Shown here in pieces: positions 37,551-46,902 of a stretch of 46,902 nucleotides of DNA. Each line of letters opens with the position of its first letter. Position 1 is the first letter of the stretch. Under the pieces are notes generated by a model, which saw nothing but the letters and a program-made list of their open reading frames with translations, had not been told where the DNA came from and did no database searches. Origin of the DNA: Guillardia theta CCMP2712 (taxonomy: Eukaryota > Protista > Cryptophyta); contig NW_005434660.1 of assembly GCF_000315625.1 (NCBI RefSeq), forward strand, positions 974,365 through 1,021,266. The letters are read 5' to 3'. The translations under genes were made by a program, and so were the position numbers.

Positions 37551-40500
37551 TCATGTTCGCGTCTGCTCTTCGAGTCTCCAGTGGTGTAGGTTTGCCTTGA
37601 GCCGCTCTAGAATCACTTCAGAGGCGGGGAAGCAGCTCACCCACGCGACCGCCAGCGGGTTCACGACGAGCTCGAAGAATCCAATCTGCGACTTAGTCAC
37701 CCCTGGCTTGTTTCTGTCCATCAGGTAGGAGACAGGCAGCCCCAGTGATCTCTCTACATCCCCCTGCCGGAAGAGCTCGTCCTCCAGTCTCTGCGACCAC
37801 TGCACGTGCACGTCCAGCTCAGCGTAGGCGTGGCCGAGGTCGCACATTTTGATCGCTCCTCGCAGCATCAGCACTAGGCTCTGCTCGTCCACCTCCGGCG
37901 GCCCGTTGGCTTCCTTGCTCGTCTCCTGCCCCGGTCCGTTGAGAGAGGGCGCGAGCTCCGGCGTGGATCGCTTCTGCACGCGATGCAGCAGCTCAGTGCG
38001 GATGAGGGATACCATCCTCTGGTGCTCTCCCATGTCGGTCGCGAGGACCATGTCGATGATGAGCTTGCGGATCTTCGACTGCGAGAGCTGCGGCACGCTG
38101 TGCATGAAGTTGCAGTCCGGGCGCTTCATGATTCGGAAGGCAGCAGCGAGGTGATGGTTCTCGTTGGGTGCCTTGTCGTTATGTAGGAGAGCTCGCTCGT
38201 GCCCCATCTTGACGAGAATGTCGTTGTTCAGCCCCAGGTGCTCGAAGTCGTGGATGATCGCCGCGAGCAGGGCCGCGAGAATGTCCGTTGGCCCCATGAA
38301 TTCCCCGATTCCCCCTCTCGATATGAACATGTGCATCTTCTGCGTCACGTCCGCGCAGTGGATCGCGTTGTGGTAGGGGTTCGACTTGGGCATTCCGCTC
38401 TCAATCTCCTGCAGGAACTTGACCAGCCGCGCCGAGTCCAGCGCGAAGTTGTCGACACACCCGTGGGTCTTGAGAAGGAAGAGGGCCAGCACTTGAACAG
38501 GTTTGCCTCCCGTCACCTCATTCAGCTTAAACGGATTGAAGTTCCAGTCATGAATAGTCTGCAAGCATTCACTGACTTCGCTGCTGTTCATAAGCTCTGC
38601 TATTCCCCGCTCAAGGAATGAAAGATGGTCTGACATCTTGTGCGACAGTTTCGTGTCTCCAAAGCTGTTTAGCAACTGAGGAGGAGGAAGTAGCGTTGCA
38701 TGTACACTGCTTGCCTCATTCATCGCCACGTCATGCGCGTCCTGCTGCAATTCTTCCCCCGTGCGCGACTCCTCCCCCGATGGACGATCGTCGCCCTGCT
38801 CCTCAATCTTCGTCTCGAGATCCTCAAAGTTTTCGGTCTTCTGAACGCCCAGCAAGCCAGCCACATCGTCGTCAAAGAGGCCAAGCAAACCAGCAGGCGA
38901 GTCAAAGTTGAAAGGAGTCTCTGGGGACTGCCGCCCTGTAGTTGAATAGATCTCATGCTCTGCGTTCTTCATTTCAACATCATCATCGTTAACATTCACA
39001 TCCAAGTTGAGCGCCTCGTAGAGATTCTCTGTGTCCTTGGCGATGATTTGAAGCAGGTCTCTCGCCAATGCGACATGAAACTGATCATCCCCGTCCCGAA
39101 TGCCATCCAATGAACATTTTACGTGATTCATGGCCAAAATCATCGACGGCTCTATGAAGTGTTCTGCTTTGCGGAGCTCAGCATAATGCATTTCGAATCT
39201 CATCCAATCGAGAGAACACAAAAGGTACAAGAAGAAGAATTTTCTGGAGCTGCATAGTGCACAACACTTTTGAAGATCATCCCTTACTTCCTTGACCCAG
39301 TTGTCACGCGATTCAACTTCTTCGAACAGGTCGATCTTGTCAGACGCTGTCATGATCTTGGAGGCACAGAGGAGACGAAGATATTCAGACTGAAGGTAAC
39401 TTCCAAGTCGGAGAACGTCTGGCAGGCATGCCGTTATCCTCGACTTGACCAGCTCCCAGTCTCCTCGAACAGCAATACATTGTAAACTGAGAATCGGATC
39501 GATCTTTTGCGTATGAGGTCCAACGTTACTTCCGAACGCTCCATGCCCCCCCTCCCCATCCCGCGACTCCGCCGACGCAGATTCAGAGTCGAGCAGAGAG
39601 CCGAAGTCGGACATGTCCTCGTCCAGGTCAAGGTTCTCGCGCTCCGACAAGATGTTCCCCTCGTGAAGCATCGAGAAATGCGCATTGATCCGCGGGTTGC
39701 AGGCCCATCGCTTCGCACGGTTGGCCAGCGACGTGCAGTGACCGAGGTCGTACTGATGCGCGATGTTCAAGGCGCGCAACGCAAACTCCTCGCATTTTCC
39801 CACTTCTCCTGTGAGCGGGAAATATTCGTTCGCTAGTGTACACAACACGACACAGAGAGTAGGAGGATGCGCCGCTTCCTCTGCCATTCTAACAACTTCC
39901 TCCAGCTTTCCACGCGCATTTTGTAGATCCCCCACGACAACAAGGGCAGGTGCCCATGACGACAGAGCAACGATGGTTTGTATGACTCCGTTGATGGCGG
40001 CGAGCTCCGAACCTGAAGCAAGATAGTCATCATAGATCTGCTTGAGACTGTCCATGTAGTGAAACAAGTTGTCAAAGTCTCCAGTGAAATAGAGAGCTGG
40101 GATTAGAGACGCCATTCCCAGCTCTTCATGCAGCCGATTTGATGTTCTCTTTCCTGACTTATAAATTCTCTTAGCAATCTTTGCGCCAACATCATAAAGC
40201 TGACGGCCGTACAAGTTCACACAAATCCCAGCTAGAGCAGGAACAGCAAGGTCGTCCAGATCTTCTGACTGTGGAATCAGTCTATGCAGACCATGATACG
40301 CTGCTATAGACTCGGGACTGCCATGGCCGTAGACAAGTAGTGTATGCGGAGCCATCTCTGCCAGCAGCATTAGCTTGCGATCTGCGATGTCTTTCTGCAA
40401 CGGAACCCTGTCAAGTATCCTGCATGCTCGTTGCAGCAATTCGATGGCAGGCAAGTACGAACATTCTGCCATTGCAGCATGCGCTGCCAAGTGTAGGTAG

Positions 40501-43500
40501 TTAGCAGCTCGATGAACGTCCTCAACTCCAACTTGGCTGTGATCAGCGGCATGCGACCAATGGTGAGCCAAGATCAAATGTGACGATCGCTCATCAAGAT
40601 CTAGCGAGCCTTCGTAATACTCGGCCACAAAATGGTGCCAAATTCTCTGGTAGCTTTTGAGCAAACTCTGATTTACACTTTCAACAAGTCCAGGGATTAC
40701 AACCTTATAAACATCGTACATTCCTGTTTTCGGATTCTTCTGATTAACGTATGCAGCAAAACTATTGTTTGAAAAGCTATCATTTGCAAGAGCTCCCTTG
40801 TATTGAAGAAGCTGAGCATGGACCTGTGATTGTATCGTGGGCGTTTGCCACTGCCAGTTGGCACACTCGTGGCAAGTGCTCGACTCTGTGCTCAACATTT
40901 GCTTCATATCTTCAATTCGTGCAGGTTGCAGCATTCCCAGGTTAATCAGCTGCTGAATGCTAGGTTCAAAATCAGGCGCAAAGTTTGGAAAAGTACTGCT
41001 GTACACATGACGAGCAAGATTAATTGTGAAGAGCGCATTATGTGAAAGAAAGCAAACAACTTTGACGAGCATCTGAACATGCACCAACAACCGATCGCCA
41101 AATTCTCCTCGGCCCAAAGCTTGCATTCTTGTCAAACCATTGTCCAAACCGGAAAGATCATTGCGAGAGACAATGGCGCCATCGCGTGTTCGAAAGATGT
41201 GCCCGTTGTCCACAAGATTTGCACAGACATTCTTTACGAAGCTCGGAGAGCATTCTCCTTTCTGTATCAATTGAACAAAGTAGGATTCAAGGGGAGGCGG
41301 AATATGCTGTACATTGTACGTCTGTCGCAGCAAATCGATGACCTTCCGCTTGAGAAAATGATACGAATAATTGTGTCTTGTATTGAATACTTCAAGCGGG
41401 GTGTCTCTTCCTTTCACTTTTACCGCAGGCATTTGTTCAAACTCAATCATAAGGCTCGATGCATCATGTGTCTCCTTATCAACGAGAATTACGTTTTCTC
41501 CCGCTTTGCACATGAGACGAGCAGCCATGTTGCACACACTCCCCATCGCACACATCTCTCGTCTTGTACTACTCCCAACAAACCCCGAGTAAGCTGTTCC
41601 TGTAGTGATGCCAATGCTTAACTTGATTGACAAATCCTGTACCCATTTCCGCATCTCAAGTCCTGCCAAGACGGCTCGCACAGGATCATTCTCGTGAGGC
41701 GAAAATGGGGGCATTCCCATAACACATATTGCTAATAGCCCCTTGTCATCCTGTAAAAACTGGCGCAAAGTTCCCTTTCGGCGATATGTTGCAACTTGAA
41801 TGGCAAGGAGAGCTCGATGGGTTTGCAGAACAGTGTCATAGTCGGGAGCTTCAAGGTCAAGATGCAGTCTGACAAACATGACGGTCATCTTTCGCAAATC
41901 AGCGGCAAAGGGAGCAATGTCCTGCAAGTCTCTTGCTCCTTCGTGACAGTACATTTTCAGAATCGGCCAAGCAGTGTAAGTGAGATTTTCAGGGATGCTG
42001 ATTCCCGGAGGATTTACGCTTTCGGAGGGTTCAGTGTAGCCCATGATTTTGAAGTTTCCTGCCATCGTTTCCTCCGCTTGAAACTCAGATTCAATGTGCG
42101 TCCAAGCCACCTTGCTCACTACGAGAGTACCGATTGCTGCCTCCTCCAGAGCATCTGCAGCCTCGAGCAAAGCCTTTCCAATAACGAGAAATTCTTTCCG
42201 AGCGCCGTTGTGCTTGTCAAGTTGTGCTCCACCAACGTGAGCAAACCACATCGGTCCACAGCTTAGAGATTGATGGAGACGCAATGTCACTCCTGCAGTG
42301 TACCGTTTACCACCACTGTATGCTTTCTTCATGTCCGCAAGCTCCTGGGCGATTTCAGGTTTTTGAGAGAGAAGAGGTACGAGCGCTGCATAGCTGAGAT
42401 GGATCATGACACAATTGCTTCCAGCAACGACAGTTGCTGTCCGTTTTGATGCGTGAGTAGCGCCATCTCACCTACGATTTCCCCTTCTTCCAGCGTTGCG
42501 ATTTCTTCACCGTGATCAATACTTTCTTCAATACTGCATTTCATGGACTGATCTGCGCTTTCGGATTCTTTTTTGACAAATATATTCACCATACCAGAAT
42601 GAACGATCAGCATGGAGTCAGCTGGAGATCCCTGCTTGATGATGACATCGCCAGCACTGAAACGCTGCAACTTGCACTGCTCTGCCAACATGGCCAGCTC
42701 CGTGCTGGTCAGAACCTGCGCATGAGTTCAGTAAGTGAATCGAAAGTCTTCGACAAACTCTTCAAGCAAACAAAGGAGATTCGCAACCAACCTTGAGCCA
42801 AGCGATGGCTCGCAGCCTCCTTCGAATTTCTAAACCCTCTAATTGAACAGCTGAAGCCAACCACCCATTCTCATCTCCCATTTCTTGTTTGTCTGCATCC
42901 ACAAGAGCAGCAGTGGCAAAGTGACGGGCAAGCTGATCTGCGAATTCAAGTGTGTTGGCGTCCGGCACGTGAACCTGCCAAATATAATCAGAAACGAGTA
43001 GTTTAAATCACTTCGATTAACCTTGAAGGTGCCGTGCAGTCTTTCAAGCTCCATAGCACACGTGACGGCTTGTTGAATGGTCTATACAAGAACAAACATT
43101 AGATGTCGCCCTGTGGGGAACTTGCATACCTTTGCTAAGGTGTTCTGGTCACACTCCCAGATCACGATGACAGCATCCCCAGCGAATTTTACGATATCTC
43201 CTGCCCAAGCCTCGACGTGCTTGATAATAGTGCTGAACATTCGATTGATCGTTGAAGTGAGAGAATCTATGCCTTCTTGCCCAAGCCCCTGGAATCTGTC
43301 CGACAATCTGGTAAAACCCTGCACATGCGCTAACTCAACCTGCAGTTTCGCAGAATTTACAAGCAGAAAATCTTACGGAGATGTCGACAATTAGGACCAC
43401 TGCCAACCTCAGCTCAGCATCTATGGGCTGATACAAACATGTCAGGTTGCTTCGAAACAAACATGGTAAATGTTACAAATTGATTTGTTGTGGCAATGCT

Positions 43501-43859
43501 CCAGTGACGAAGGACGTCTTTTGTGACTTGCTGCTCATTTCATGTTCAGACGTGCTTCATTCAAGGTCACTTGAGGAAAACCTGGTCTTGGTGCGATGTG
43601 TGCTGTTGTTGGACTGCCTTTGCGATTGCAACTCTTGGCAAGAAACACTGGAAATACCTGTTCATAGTCGATGAGCAATCAATCGTTGACGACTCGAACA
43701 GTCTTACTCATATTTGCGTTGGTTGACCAGGCTGACTGCCGCACGCCACTTCTTCCCTTTGAGAGCAAGAGGCTTCGTTTTCTCATTTAAGGATGGTCTA
43801 CGGCCGATACCATTCTCACCCTGTTGCTCTTCGCCCGACTTACGGAGCACCTTCAGCAT
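37551..43859 (-). CDS. Soluble-type (ADCY10/sAC-like) class III nucleotidyl cyclase with an inserted cNMP-binding domain, helical/TPR-like region and C-terminal class I phosphodiesterase; frameshift at ~42445
   Basis: C1: VLIVDIS|GFTRL..GDIVKFAGDAVIVIW (43390-43155). CNB domain: FSAGDVIIKQGSPADSMLIVHSGMV..GEIVGEMALL..RTATV (42715-42400). C2: LRKMTVMFVRL..QFLQDDKG..SIGITTG..GFVGSSTRREMCAMGSVCNMAARLM. PDE: YHNAIHCADV, HDFEHLGLNN, ENHHL, LATDM, IKMCDLGH, FRQGD, KSQIGF. Start codon tentative. Confidence 0.92.
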
Positions 43860-44803
43860 CTTTTCCGTTTGTGTGGTTCCACCACAACTGAACGGATGTT
43901 CGTAAAACCAATGACCGACCGCGATATACTGACAAGCGTTCAGACCATCGATCCCTTGTCGAGATTTCCACACAATCTATCAATATGCAAGAGCTTATCT
44001 CGTCCAGGCAAGATGAATCAAGAGCAATGCAAGAGACTGAACAGATTCACAGATCTTCTCCCATCTTATACGCTGAGAGCAGGAGGCCGAGGGCTGACAG
44101 CCGCTAAAAAGTATTGCTTGTCATCAGCAGCGACTGTCCATAAAATTCTCGGTCCTGAGCCCAATGTCAAAGAAAAGTTCGACATTACCCTTGCTAGTAA
44201 AGTATCGTTCAGGAGCACGCTCATTGCTACCTTGATTAGACCATGTAAAATCTAACGTCTCGATCATGTACCGAGATCTCTTCTGATTTTAAACAAGAAT
44301 ATTCTTCTCGACTCTTTGCTTCCTCTGCCTCTTCTTGCCCGATTCGAGTGACTAAAAATCGCCTTCCTCCTTCCTCGCACCTCATGCATATTGATCAACA
44401 CTACCCCTCAGACTCAATACCCCACCCCTACCTCCTTCGTTCAACCCCACCCACCATTTCCTATCTTGAAACCCACTCTTTGATCATTTCAGGAACGTCT
44501 CTGCCGGGAACCCTCCACATGATTACACTACCCCTACCTTTCCCCCCAATCCATTATAAACTGAGCCGGTACAAGGAATTCAGTACCCCACCAATAACTC
44601 TCTCGGAAGCGGGCAGGTTTGGGGCGGGGGTTGGGGCGCCAGCCATGAGACTACCCTTCTTTTTCACATCTCTACCACCCACCTCCATGAGATTGATGGG
44701 GTAGAAATCAGGGGGGCAGAGAAAGAGATCGCGAGGGGGTACAGGGGTAGAGAAAGAGATCAGGGGTATAGAGAAAATATTCATGAAGGGATCGATAGTG
44801 TAG

Positions 44804-44835
44804 GTCTCGTACTAATTTTAACTTAACTTTGAGTA
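44804..44835 (+). repeat. Dispersed motif copy (gtctcgtactaattttaacttaactttgagta)
   Basis: Shares both the tcgtact prefix and the core with the 17833 and 20976 copies. Followed by ccgggcc. Confidence 0.85.
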
Positions 44836-45148
44836 CATGTGTAGGGCAACACGATCCGGGCCTCGGAGTCGGAGGCATGCAGAACTAAGTTCGTGAAGTT
44901 GAAGACAAGGAGCAGCCTTCGCATAAAAGAGGAGCAGCCTCGCAAAGACAAGGTTTAGGGTCCCAATACCCGCGCGCCTCTTTAGACTTAGGATTGTTTT
45001 GCAATGCTCTCAAGGAAAAGGTGGCGGAGTGGTTGCACAGCAAGCGCTGGACTCGCGTGCAAGGAAACAGCAAGAAGGCCAGGAGGGTTCCGAAATTCCT
45101 AATCATGGCACTGAGTAAATTCTCGCTGAGCTTGAAGGAAGACAACCG

Positions 45149-45295
45149 TTTAGGGTTTAGGGTTTAGGCCCTGACAGAGGCATGCTGCTCCCTGACAGAG
45201 GCATGCTGCTCCCCTGACAGAGGCATGCTGCTCCCTGACAGAGGCATGCTGCTCCCTGACAGAGGCATGCTGCTCCCTGACAGAGGCATGCTGCT
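45149..45295 (+). repeat. Interstitial telomere-type repeat (TTTAGGG x~3) fused to a 21-bp minisatellite x6
   Basis: tttagggtttagggtttagg at 45149-45168, then ccctgacagaggcatgctgct x6 at 45169-45295. Confidence 0.93.
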
Positions 45296-45376
45296 CTGCG
45301 GCGCGTAGGGAGAGCGCAAGGGGACCGGAGGAAGCTGCGAGCAAGAGGTTCGTATAGTTCAAACAGCTTTCTAAGC

Positions 45377-46902
45377 ATGGTACTACAGTATGATGAGAGC
45401 GTTCGCAACCTGCTGTATCGGAGATCATGCCAATACACGCAGGGCGAGCGCTCTGGAGGCCACGTCGAAGAGGCCGCCGACCTCGTCGAGAGGGTGAAGA
45501 ACTTCGCGAAGCGGTATCCTGGTAGTAGGACAGCTCATGCTTGCAGAGCTGAGGGGGGATGCACCCCCGACGCTATCGCTGAAGCCATCCGCTCAACATG
45601 TCGGCAGGCGAGACGCGACCTGTTTGAAGACTCTCTGAGGGAATGGAGCTCAGAGTCGAGAGCATGGTTTATACAACAGATGGAGGAGGCCAAGAAGCAG
45701 AATGTCGAGACATACATCGGCACAGAAGGCACCGAGGGGACCTCCTTCATCTCCATGACTCTCCTGGGCATCTCCTCGATGTATGTTCGACAAGAAGACA
45801 AGTTGAAATCGAAGCTTATGGAACTGGGTCTCATGGTAGACTCAGTCGATGGAGTCGACAAGGCCATCATGTGGAAAGCACCTTACAGACCTGAGATAGC
45901 ACGAGCAGACGACATCTCAGTCACCGTCTCCTTCCTTCGGAATGAAGCAGCCATGGAGCTATGGGAAGGCAGGAGAGAATACTGCATAGACGGCAGATCG
46001 TTCAGAGCCACAGAGGTGAGCATTGCACATGACCGGTCCTTCAAGCTTCGAGCCAAGCGAGGACCTTGGGGCAAGGGAGGGAGCCTTGCCGAGCTATCAC
46101 AGCTCTTAGCTCTTGGAGGAATGTCGACGGCCGACATAGCTCAGATCTATCGATTTCAGCTGCTCTCGCAATCTCTTGCAGCCGCAGAGGTACAACCACT
46201 TGCGGGCATGCTCGTGCAGGGTCCTGGGCAGAGAGGTCGCAAGGGGCCGAGCCCGAAGACGTATGTTGCTGTTGGGGCAAGTACTGGCACTCTCCAGCAA
46301 AAAGAGCTGGAGTGGGTGCTCAGCTCGCCTTCGACGGCAAGTTGCGAGCAGACCTTGGCCTCGTTCAGAGAGAGCGAGGCGATGGAGGGGGTACATCTCA
46401 CTCTCATCAGCGACGACGCCAAGCTCAGAGAGACGTTTGCAGTCGAGCTCACAGCCGACACCTTCGTTCCTAGGGGAAAGATCGCTAAGCAAAGGAGGGC
46501 ACTCCGCGAGAGAGATCATGCGGGGCGCAGCAGCTTCAGAGTACAGATCAAGTCGAGGTCAAGCATGAGCACAGGCCGCTTCTCGAGGAAGGAGATGGAA
46601 GCGCTGTGCGGAGGAGGTAACACATCGATCACGAGAGTCAAGCGAGCCATGTTGGAGTTAGCAAGAAGGATAGGCGTGACGCTGGTCAGCGTCGAGGTCG
46701 AGGAGGATCGTGACACGCTCAGCTGGGATGGGAGCCTGATAGCTCTCTCCCTGGCGACCAAGGCAGAGGCTCGACGCTTGATGGAAGACATGCCCTTCTA
46801 CTTGGAAGGGATCCTGGAAGTCAAGCTCGAAGCGGTGGGGTTCAAGCTCAACGGGCCTCAGCATGAGTTATGTGCCGGGGAAGGGGGTACCAGTCCAATA
46901 AA
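45377..46902 (+). CDS. Uninterrupted ORF of at least 508 codons, truncated by the window edge; function unknown, possibly encoded by a mobile element
   Basis: Translated by hand: MVLQYDESVRNLLYRRSCQ...LFEDSLREWSSESRAWFIQQMEEAKK...SFRVQIKSRSS...LEVKLEAVGFKLNGPQHELCAGEGGTSPI, with no stop before 46902. It is missing from the track because it has no stop codon. Confidence 0.7.
   Translation, partial: MVLQYDESVRNLLYRRSCQYTQGERSGGHVEEAADLVERVKNFAKRYPGSRTAHACRAEGGCTPDAIAEAIRSTCRQARRDLFEDSLREWSSESRAWFIQQMEEAKKQNVETYIGTEGTEGTSFISMTLLGISSMYVRQEDKLKSKLMELGLMVDSVDGVDKAIMWKAPYRPEIARADDISVTVSFLRNEAAMELWEGRREYCIDGRSFRATEVSIAHDRSFKLRAKRGPWGKGGSLAELSQLLALGGMSTADIAQIYRFQLLSQSLAAAEVQPLAGMLVQGPGQRGRKGPSPKTYVAVGASTGTLQQKELEWVLSSPSTASCEQTLASFRESEAMEGVHLTLISDDAKLRETFAVELTADTFVPRGKIAKQRRALRERDHAGRSSFRVQIKSRSSMSTGRFSRKEMEALCGGGNTSITRVKRAMLELARRIGVTLVSVEVEEDRDTLSWDGSLIALSLATKAEARRLMEDMPFYLEGILEVKLEAVGFKLNGPQHELCAGEGGTSPI

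What the first reader, a model, noticed from the sequence alone, without database searches (positions are those of the whole stretch)
42300..43060. cNMP-binding domain inserted inside catalytic domain C1
C1 stops after the helix AVTCAMELERLHGTFK (~43025) and resumes about 200 aa later at TLRLHQSLSCGPMWFAHVGG..KEFLVIGKALLEAADA, equivalent to sAC IRVKIGLAAG..HFLVIGQAV. The CNB domain fills the gap. Inference: an insertion within the fold suggests direct allosteric control of the active site by product or by the other cyclic nucleotide.
Basis: partly seen in the sequence, partly recalled or inferred. Interest (0 to 1): 0.75.

Follow-up and report, generated by a model that had tools for sequence, protein, structure and literature searches.

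The report
Cyclic-nucleotide sensor nested inside a cyclase
An expressed gene of a cryptophyte alga (most likely Guillardia theta) encodes a soluble-type adenylyl cyclase in which a cyclic-nucleotide-binding domain is spliced into a surface loop of the first catalytic domain. I found this layout only in cryptophytes and in no paper, so it may be a natural product-sensing switch built into the enzyme; that function is untested.

Summary
The gene lies on the minus strand and has eight exons. RNA contigs from two runs show all seven GT..AG introns.

C1 runs through exons E4 to E6 and breaks after helix alpha3 (…HGTFK, 43022). It resumes at strand beta4 (VTLRLHQ…, 42290). About 203 residues lie between: a conserved linker and a full CNB domain (Pfam PF00027, 5.6e-13).

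- The part before the insertion aligns to human sAC residues 41-132.
- A profile of the part after it aligns to sAC 137-221 (E 6.7e-11).
- An AlphaFold model of the homologue P0002 superposes on sAC with Z 43.8, 2.5 Å, 421-431 of about 460 residues. The two halves therefore form one domain.

It is an assembly error: three independent runs carry the extra base.

The layout is conserved. A second copy in this genome has the insertion but no PDE domain. Hanusia and Chroomonas also have it. It is rare: about a dozen 50%-identity clusters among 1.84 billion representatives.

Allosteric control by a cyclic nucleotide is plausible but untested. The insertion point is a peripheral loop, not the active site. 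About half of the relatives have lost the ligand-binding arginine.

The parts
43708..43859 (-). Exon E1, coding part. The ATG is at 43859. The last two bases form a split codon with the first base of E2. The transcript reaches at least 44154.
   Evidence: RNA contigs X5 and X7 run unbroken over 43705-44154 and join to E2. Translation has no stops.
43582..43657 (-). Exon E2, the N-terminal helix before C1 (…YFQCFLPRV…)
   Evidence: Joints 43654/43705 and 43530/43582. The motif is shared with P0002, P0005 and P0007.
43477..43530 (-). Exon E3 (18 codons)
   Evidence: Joints in X5 and X7. It matches P0001 residues 39-58 at 95%.
43377..43427 (-). Exon E4: C1 strand beta1 with the first metal-binding Asp (…VDIS)
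   Evidence: Joints 43427/43477 and 43317/43376. It aligns to sAC VDISGFT, Asp47 (via P0002).
43130..43318 (-). Exon E5: C1 alpha1, alpha2, beta2 and beta3, with the Lys and second metal Asp (GDIVKFAGD)
   Evidence: Translation. It aligns to sAC 50-110, including Lys95 and Asp99.
43022..43081 (-). Exon E6: C1 helix alpha3. Its last residue is the last one before the insertion.
   Evidence: Joints. It aligns to sAC up to residue 132.
42843..42974 (-). Insertion, N-side linker. It has a conserved motif (HVPDANTLEFADQLARHFA) followed by a variable acidic stretch.
   Evidence: The motif is conserved in P0001, P0002, P0005, P0088 and P0095. The model has low confidence here.
42321..42842 (-). CNB domain: N-terminal helices, beta-barrel, phosphate-binding cassette, and helices alphaB and alphaC. 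Intron 42791..42716 interrupts it.
   Evidence: Pfam PF00027, 5.6e-13. PDB hits to the CNB domains of PKG, PKA-R, HCN and MloK1. Model residues 172-329.
42444..42447 (-). A-run where the window lacks one base. With that base the cassette reads …THQ-K-RTATVVA in frame.
   Evidence: 'Put in behind 42443: T' in X5, X7 and X2. P0001 agrees.
42291..42320 (-). Short connector (about 10 codons) from CNB helix alphaC to C1 strand beta4
   Evidence: Model residues 330-337 of P0002:40-720, pLDDT below 50 at 331-335.
42036..42290 (-). Second half of C1 (beta4 to beta8)
   Evidence: Profile A2 hits sAC 137-221, E 6.7e-11. Coordinates.
41379..41894 (-). C2 catalytic domain, with the purine-binding Lys (DDKG) and the Asn and Arg (CNMAARLM)
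   Evidence: Pfam Guanylate_cyc, 2.6e-8. It aligns to sAC 278-452. Coordinates.
37602..38375 (-). C-terminal class I cyclic-nucleotide phosphodiesterase domain
   Evidence: Pfam PDEase_I, 4.1e-66, full profile 1-237 of 238.

Best explanation
SHOWN. This is a transcribed, intact gene for a protein of about 1976 residues. Its parts, in order, are:
- a soluble-adenylyl-cyclase-type tandem catalytic core (C1-C2);
- a long helical region;
- a class I phosphodiesterase.

A module of about 203 residues sits in the alpha3-beta4 loop of C1. It consists of a conserved linker and a complete CNB domain. The two C1 halves are predicted to fold into one normal domain that pairs with C2 as in human sAC. The catalytic residues are present: two metal Asp in C1, and the purine Lys, Asn and Arg in C2. 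The CNB cassette keeps its ribose-binding Glu and phosphate-binding Arg-Thr.

INFERRED. The CNB domain binds a cyclic nucleotide, most simply the enzyme's own product. That product is probably cAMP, because the purine-specifying Lys is invariant; however, the second specificity position is Cys, as in guanylyl cyclases. Ligand binding would move the alphaB/alphaC hinge of the CNB domain. Helix alphaC is tied to C1 strand beta4 by only about 8-10 residues. The movement would therefore be passed to the central sheet and the beta4-beta5 arm of C1. This would change how C1 sits on C2 and so change cyclase activity. From memory, the insertion point corresponds to the alpha2/alpha3 cleft of C1 where inhibitory G-alpha-i docks on mammalian membrane cyclases, a site known to control catalysis from a distance.

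The sign of the feedback cannot be read from sequence. Together with the C-terminal PDE, it would give either a set-point controller (if negative) or a pulse generator (if positive).
For: - Gene model and expression: seven GT..AG joints in two RNA assemblies, and the frame restored by reads. Exon translations have no stops.
- Insertion point: sAC 41-132 aligns before it and sAC 137-221 after it. Uninterrupted tandem cyclases bridge the same point with about 20 residues.
- One domain from two halves: AlphaFold pLDDT 84.9 and pTM 0.75. Foldseek TM 0.78-0.83 by target. VIA Z 43.8, rmsd 2.5 Å, 421-431 of about 460 sAC residues.
- CNB identity: Pfam and PDB CNB hits.
- Selection: the layout is kept in a second G. 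theta copy, and in Hanusia, Chroomonas and metagenomic relatives. The CNB part is 95.6% identical to Hanusia, against 92.6% for the rest.
- Tie to the cyclase rather than the PDE: the second copy on contig C5 has the insertion with a full CNB (1e-15) but no PDE.
Against: - No ligand binding or enzyme activity can be tested here.
The CNB-core interface and its distance to the active site were therefore not measured.
- The model is of the 48%-identical homologue P0002, not of the window's own protein.
- The phosphate-binding Arg is lost in about half of the relatives (P0003/P0007, P0006, P0091, P0092, P0094, P0098, P0103, P0108, P0118). The insertion therefore persists without canonical ligand binding in those lineages.
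- The bicarbonate-binding Arg of sAC (Arg176) is Ala here, so sAC-type regulation cannot simply be carried over.
Confidence: 0.55

Rival explanations
1. The nested CNB domain mainly controls the C-terminal phosphodiesterase, or switches the polypeptide between making and degrading. This would resemble GAF domains in PDE2/5 or the CNB domains of Dictyostelium GbpA/GbpB. Its position inside C1 would then be an accident of evolution.
For: The same chain carries a complete PDEase_I domain (4.1e-66). P0002, P0003 and the P0007 locus also carry or adjoin a PDE. Product-activated PDEs are well known (from memory).
Against: The G. theta copy on C5 and Hanusia P0005 keep the insertion, with an intact cassette, but have no PDE. 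About 1300 residues separate the CNB from the PDE domain.
Confidence: 0.2
2. The insertion is a ligand-independent structural module, for example a docking, dimerisation or localisation surface. The CNB fold has been retained but no longer works as a sensor.
For: About half of the family has lost the phosphate-binding Arg yet keeps the insertion and the cyclase catalytic residues. The most conserved element is the non-CNB linker motif.
Against: The window's protein, Hanusia P0001 and P0005, and P0002, P0004, P0096, P0109 and P0116 keep the full Gly-Glu…Arg-Thr-Ala cassette. That would be unexpected without selection for ligand binding.
Confidence: 0.2
3. The feature is an artefact: a pseudogene with a frameshifted CNB, or a wrong gene model that merges separate genes or exons.
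For: The window as assembled has a frameshift at 42444-42447.
Against: Three independent runs restore the frame. Two spliced RNA contigs cover E1 to E8 without a break. Transcript-derived homologues have the same order of parts.
Confidence: 0.03

Closest known systems
Human soluble adenylyl cyclase (ADCY10, e.g. PDB 4CLF) and bacterial or protist sAC-type tandem cyclases
   Same: C1-C2 lie in one chain. The metal Asp pair and Lys are in C1; the purine Lys, Asn and Arg are in C2. The fold superposes at Z 43.8. A long helical C-terminal region follows.
   Different: A module of about 203 residues (linker plus CNB) replaces the 4-residue gap in the alpha3-beta4 loop. The bicarbonate-binding Arg176 is Ala. 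sAC Thr405 is Cys. No AAA_16/STAND hit was found. A PDE domain sits at the C-terminus.
Cyclases regulated by their own product through a terminal sensor domain: cyanobacterial CyaB1/CyaB2 (cAMP-binding GAF domains, PMC4411481) and bacterial cyclases fused end to end with a CNB domain (PMC4886424)
   Same: A cyclic-nucleotide sensor and a class III cyclase lie in one polypeptide, which allows product feedback.
   Different: In those enzymes the sensor precedes or follows the catalytic domain. Here it is nested inside the catalytic fold.
CAPE of Marchantia and other streptophytes (combined adenylyl cyclase and cAMP phosphodiesterase, PMC11032487)
   Same: One polypeptide carries both synthesis and degradation of a cyclic nucleotide.
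   Different: [quoted passage not shown] The protein here runs cyclase(C1[CNB]-C2)-helical region-PDE. Common descent was not tested.
IMP dehydrogenase with its CBS (Bateman) module inserted in the catalytic barrel (from memory)
   Same: A nucleotide-sensing regulatory domain is inserted in a loop of a catalytic domain. This is a working analogy for allostery by domain insertion.
   Different: The folds and chemistry are unrelated. It is an analogy only.

Membership tests
sAC-type (ADCY10-like) tandem class III cyclase | Two class III catalytic domains in one chain forming a pseudo-heterodimer | tested here: met
   Two sAC stretches plus the C1b profile hit. The model superposes on sAC residues 7-468, Z 43.8. 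The model is of homologue P0002.
sAC-type (ADCY10-like) tandem class III cyclase | Catalytic residues: two metal Asp in C1; purine Lys, Asn and Arg in C2 | tested here: met
   VDIS (E4), GDIVKFAGD (E5), DDKG and CNMAARLM align to sAC Asp47, Lys95, Asp99, Lys334, Asn412 and Arg416 (via P0002).
sAC-type (ADCY10-like) tandem class III cyclase | Bicarbonate site (Lys95 and Arg176 of human sAC) | tested here: not met
   The Lys is present. The Arg176 position aligns to Ala (alignment applied to the window sequence). Residue numbering of sAC is from memory.
sAC-type (ADCY10-like) tandem class III cyclase | C-terminal STAND/P-loop plus TPR region | tested here: inconclusive
   Only a weak TPR_MalT hit (E 0.064) and no AAA_16. 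Bacterial relatives do carry PF13191.
CNB domain (Pfam PF00027) | Profile match above the curated cut-off | tested here: met
   49.1 bits against a cut-off of 27.5 on 42407-42715. 57.9 bits for the C5 copy.
CNB domain (Pfam PF00027) | Phosphate-binding cassette with Gly-Glu and Arg-Thr/Ser-Ala | tested here: met
   GEM…THQ in piece E8a and RTATVVA in piece E8b. They are in one frame once the base shown by reads is counted. Hanusia P0001 is the same.
CNB domain (Pfam PF00027) | Binds cAMP or cGMP | not testable with these tools
   Needs a binding assay.
Class I cyclic-nucleotide phosphodiesterase (PF00233) | Full-length profile match with the His/Asp metal motifs | tested here: met
   223.5 bits, profile positions 1-237 of 238. 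The YHNAIH and HDFEH motifs are present.
CAPE-type AC/PDE bifunctional enzymes | N-terminal PDE followed by a single C-terminal cyclase domain | tested here: not met
   The order here is tandem cyclase first and PDE last. Not filed as CAPE.

The most novel reading that the evidence does not exclude
This would be the first natural case of a ligand sensor nested inside the catalytic fold of a class III nucleotidyl cyclase. The enzyme's own product would gate synthesis through the C1 beta4 strand. With the PDE on the same chain, the protein would be a self-contained generator of cyclic-nucleotide pulses or set-points. It would also be a ready-made template for engineering cyclases by domain insertion.
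Probability: 0.4. Interest if true: 0.8.

Novelty: new variant of a known kind. Interest (0 to 1): 0.62.

Why it matters
All described sensor-cyclase combinations that I could find place the sensor before or after the catalytic domain (PMC4886424, PMC4411481). Five full-text searches found no paper on a nested one.

A nested CNB domain at the loop equivalent to the G-alpha-i docking cleft would show a new way to couple a signal to cyclase geometry. It would also give a compact natural scaffold for engineered, ligand-gated cyclases.

Biologically, it suggests that cryptophyte algae run an autonomous synthesis-sensing-degradation circuit on one protein. This circuit has at least two copies per genome, one with and one without the degrading arm.

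Tried and rejected
1. Pseudogene reading of the frameshift. Rejected: X5, X7 and X2 all carry the extra base.

2. A 35-nt GTGAG…CAG mini-intron (42471..42437). It would also restore the frame, but would delete the cassette. Rejected: no joint is seen there in either RNA contig, and homologues keep the cassette.

3. My first exon model. It read …VELAHVQGFT with His in place of the metal Asp, using the acceptor at 43340. Replaced by the RNA-supported exon E4 and the acceptor at 43319.

4. A start codon at the ATG in …ATGAACAG (about 43665). It lies inside the E1-E2 intron.

5. Single-sequence phmmer against the PDB did not find the second half of C1. A 36-sequence profile did.

6. The Hanusia transcript P0001 as a full template. 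It lacks exon E4 and reads through an intron region at its 5' end, so P0002 was folded instead.

7. Literature searches for a description of this layout or of cryptophyte cyclases found nothing relevant.

9. Not done: joining the exons into one protein for a search or a fold.

10. Not done: measuring the CNB-core interface. Model coordinates are not exposed.

Full report
**Where and what**

The finding lies in a minus-strand, intron-bearing gene. The long ORF 37551..42407 and the short ORFs upstream of it are exons of one gene. The best database hit is a transcript-derived protein of the cryptophyte Hanusia phi (P0001, 93% identity, 1921 aa, with PDE, cyclase and CNB domains). The window's assembly has 87.1 Mb in 669 contigs. 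From memory, that fits Guillardia theta, and other notes of this scan also name that species (unchecked AI notes).

**Gene model**

I laid four public runs on 41000-45500. Two assemblies (X5, X7) skip seven intervals that all begin GT and end AG on the minus strand, so they are RNA. A third (X2) keeps these intervals, so it is DNA.

The exons are:

| Exon | Coordinates | Content |
|---|---|---|
| E1 | about 44154..43708 | ATG at 43859 |
| E2 | 43657..43582 | helix before C1 |
| E3 | 43530..43477 | 18 codons |
| E4 | 43427..43377 | C1 beta1 |
| E5 | 43318..43130 | C1 alpha1 to beta3 |
| E6 | 43081..43022 | C1 alpha3 |
| E7 | 42974..42792 | linker and start of CNB |
| E8 | 42715..37551 | rest of CNB, C1 second half, C2, helical region, PDE |

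Each exon translates without a stop. The introns are 47-76 nt long. Summing the exons gives a protein of about 1976 residues.

All searches of the window's own protein were done exon by exon, by reference.

**The frameshift**

In the window, the first part of the CNB domain (…GEIVGEMALLTHQ) and its continuation (RTATVVA…) are in different frames. The site is a run of four A's (minus strand, 42447..42444).

X5, X7 and X2 each carry one more base there (table 4). Hanusia P0001 reads THQ-K-RTATVVA. The gene is therefore intact, and the window carries a homopolymer error or a difference peculiar to that assembly. A 35-nt mini-intron would also have restored the frame, but no joint is seen there.

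**Is C1 really split?**

Four lines of evidence say yes.

1. Pfam finds cNMP_binding on 42407-42715 (5.6e-13), Guanylate_cyc for C2 and PDEase_I (4.1e-66) on the long exon.
2. The homologue P0002 has the same order of parts and a complete N-terminus. It aligns to human sAC at residues 41-132 before the insertion and 278-452 for C2.
3. A 36-sequence profile of the segment that follows the CNB domain hits sAC 137-221 at E 6.7e-11. The insertion therefore replaces the alpha3-beta4 loop (sAC 133-136).
4. Uninterrupted tandem cyclases match both flanks and bridge the point with about 20 residues. Examples are P0011 from Chloroflexota-type bacteria, Salpingoeca P0034 and P0008.

In the window's protein the insertion is 203 residues, about 195-397.

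**Do the halves form one domain?**

I folded P0002:40-720 with a 36-row alignment. The result has mean pLDDT 84.9 and pTM 0.75.

- C1 is formed by model residues 38-136 and 338-422.
- The CNB domain is residues 172-329.
- C2 is residues 469-645.

Foldseek ranks human sAC first, with TM by target 0.78-0.83 over the whole length. VIA-align gives Z 43.8, rmsd 2.5 Å and 421-431 aligned residues of about 460, with model residues 1-648 against sAC 7-468. More than 90% of the sAC core is matched, including both parts of C1.

Two caveats apply. The model is of a 48%-identical homologue. Its coordinates are not exposed, so I could not measure where the CNB domain sits on the core.

**Anatomy of the insertion**

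- After alpha3 comes a strongly conserved motif (HVPDANTLEFADQLARHFA), then a variable acidic stretch. Both have low model confidence (residues 144-169).
- Next come the CNB N-terminal helices, the beta-barrel (with a variable loop, model residues 244-259), the phosphate-binding cassette, and helices alphaB (304-313) and alphaC (315-329).
- About eight residues then lead into beta4 at 338.

The C-side junction is therefore short and the N-side junction long. From general knowledge of CNB domains, ligand binding moves the alphaB/alphaC hinge. That movement would act on beta4. This is inference.

**Catalytic competence**

The window keeps both metal Asp and the Lys of C1 (E4, E5). It also keeps the purine Lys, Asn and Arg of C2. 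The Lys is invariant in all 36 aligned proteins, which suggests ATP as substrate. The position of sAC Thr405 is Cys, as in guanylyl cyclases, so I leave specificity open. The Arg of the sAC bicarbonate site is Ala.

**Conservation and distribution**

- In the window's genome, a second gene on contig C5 has the same C1a-CNB-C1b order. Its long exon ends in a stop and is followed by an opposite-strand glycine-transporter-like gene. It therefore has no PDE. Hanusia P0005 also has no PDE.
- At least one further cyclase in the genome (contig C34) matches both C1 flanks. They lie only 113 nt apart, so there is no room for a CNB domain between them.
- A profile search of 1.84 billion representatives found five full-length proteins that match the whole profile in one stretch: P0007, P0091, P0092, P0094 and P0098. 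It also found about ten fragments that cross a junction. All other strong hits are multi-CNB proteins.
- The named members are Hanusia phi and Chroomonas sp. CCMP1168, both cryptophytes. The rest are unnamed metagenome or transcriptome contigs.
- The cassette Arg is kept in the window's protein and in P0001, P0002, P0004, P0005, P0096, P0109 and P0116. It is lost in P0003/P0007, P0006 (His), P0091, P0092, P0094, P0098, P0103, P0108 and P0118. The cyclase motifs remain in all of them.
- Between Guillardia and Hanusia, the CNB part is 95.6% identical and the rest of the long exon 92.6%.

**Reading**

The architecture is established. The most likely function is product sensing that modulates the cyclase through beta4 and the C1-C2 orientation (confidence about 0.55 for the whole statement).

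- The PDE-less copy argues that the sensor belongs to the cyclase.
- The loss of the Arg in many relatives, and the flexible junctions, argue for caution.
- From memory (Dessauer et al. 1998; Tesmer et al. 1997), the equivalent cleft of C1 in membrane cyclases binds G-alpha-i, and the mirror site on C2 binds G-alpha-s. Peripheral sites of this kind can therefore control catalysis. I did not test this correspondence.

**Comparison with what is known**

Product-sensing cyclases with terminal GAF or CNB domains are known (PMC4411481, PMC4886424). A cyclase-PDE fusion is also known (CAPE, PMC11032487). Five full-text searches found no description of a sensor nested in the cyclase fold, nor of cryptophyte cyclases.

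I rate it a new variant of a known kind, with interest 0.62.

Noticed in passing
window 43377-43427 (exon E4) and 43531-43581: The Hanusia phi transcript protein P0001 joins E3 directly to E5 (…TTNQF|GFTRL…). It therefore lacks the 17-codon exon that carries strand beta1 and the first metal-binding Asp. Its N-terminus also reads through the region that is the E2-E3 intron here. This is either a mis-processed transcript or an in-frame exon-skipping isoform that would make a catalytically dead C1. The two Guillardia RNA contigs include E4.
   Followed up: partly
G000:C5:657420-658729 (L019:1921-3230) and onward to L019:6482: A second gene in this genome has the same CNB-in-C1 insertion and a C2 domain, but no phosphodiesterase. 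Its long exon ends at L019:6482. A glycine-transporter-like gene (PF03458) follows on the other strand.
   Followed up: partly
window 45169-45296: A 21-bp minisatellite of 6 copies, 98% matching. The runs differ here: there are variant letters, and one contig replaces part of the array. The ORF list shows it as a repeated EQHASVR-like peptide on the minus strand.
   Followed up: no
window 45228-45500: Word depth jumps to hundreds or thousands in all contig runs (X5 14058, X7 577, X2 1566, against a DNA baseline of about 5.5). Several variant positions occur. This looks like a high-copy repeat or a very abundant transcript just upstream of the cyclase gene.
   Followed up: no
window 42927-42974 (motif HVPDANTLEFADQLARHFA in exon E7): The non-CNB linker at the start of the insertion is the most conserved stretch of the whole insertion across copies and species. 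Yet the model gives it low confidence. It may be a docking element for another part of the protein or for a partner.
   Followed up: no
L015-L018 (metagenome scaffolds carrying P0007): In a freshwater-type metagenome relative, the cyclase-CNB gene call (1152 aa) is followed about 110 nt later by a separate call of about 800 aa with PDEase_I. This is probably one gene split by an intron or a frameshift. That lineage would then also have the cyclase-PDE fusion, although its CNB cassette is degenerate.
   Followed up: no
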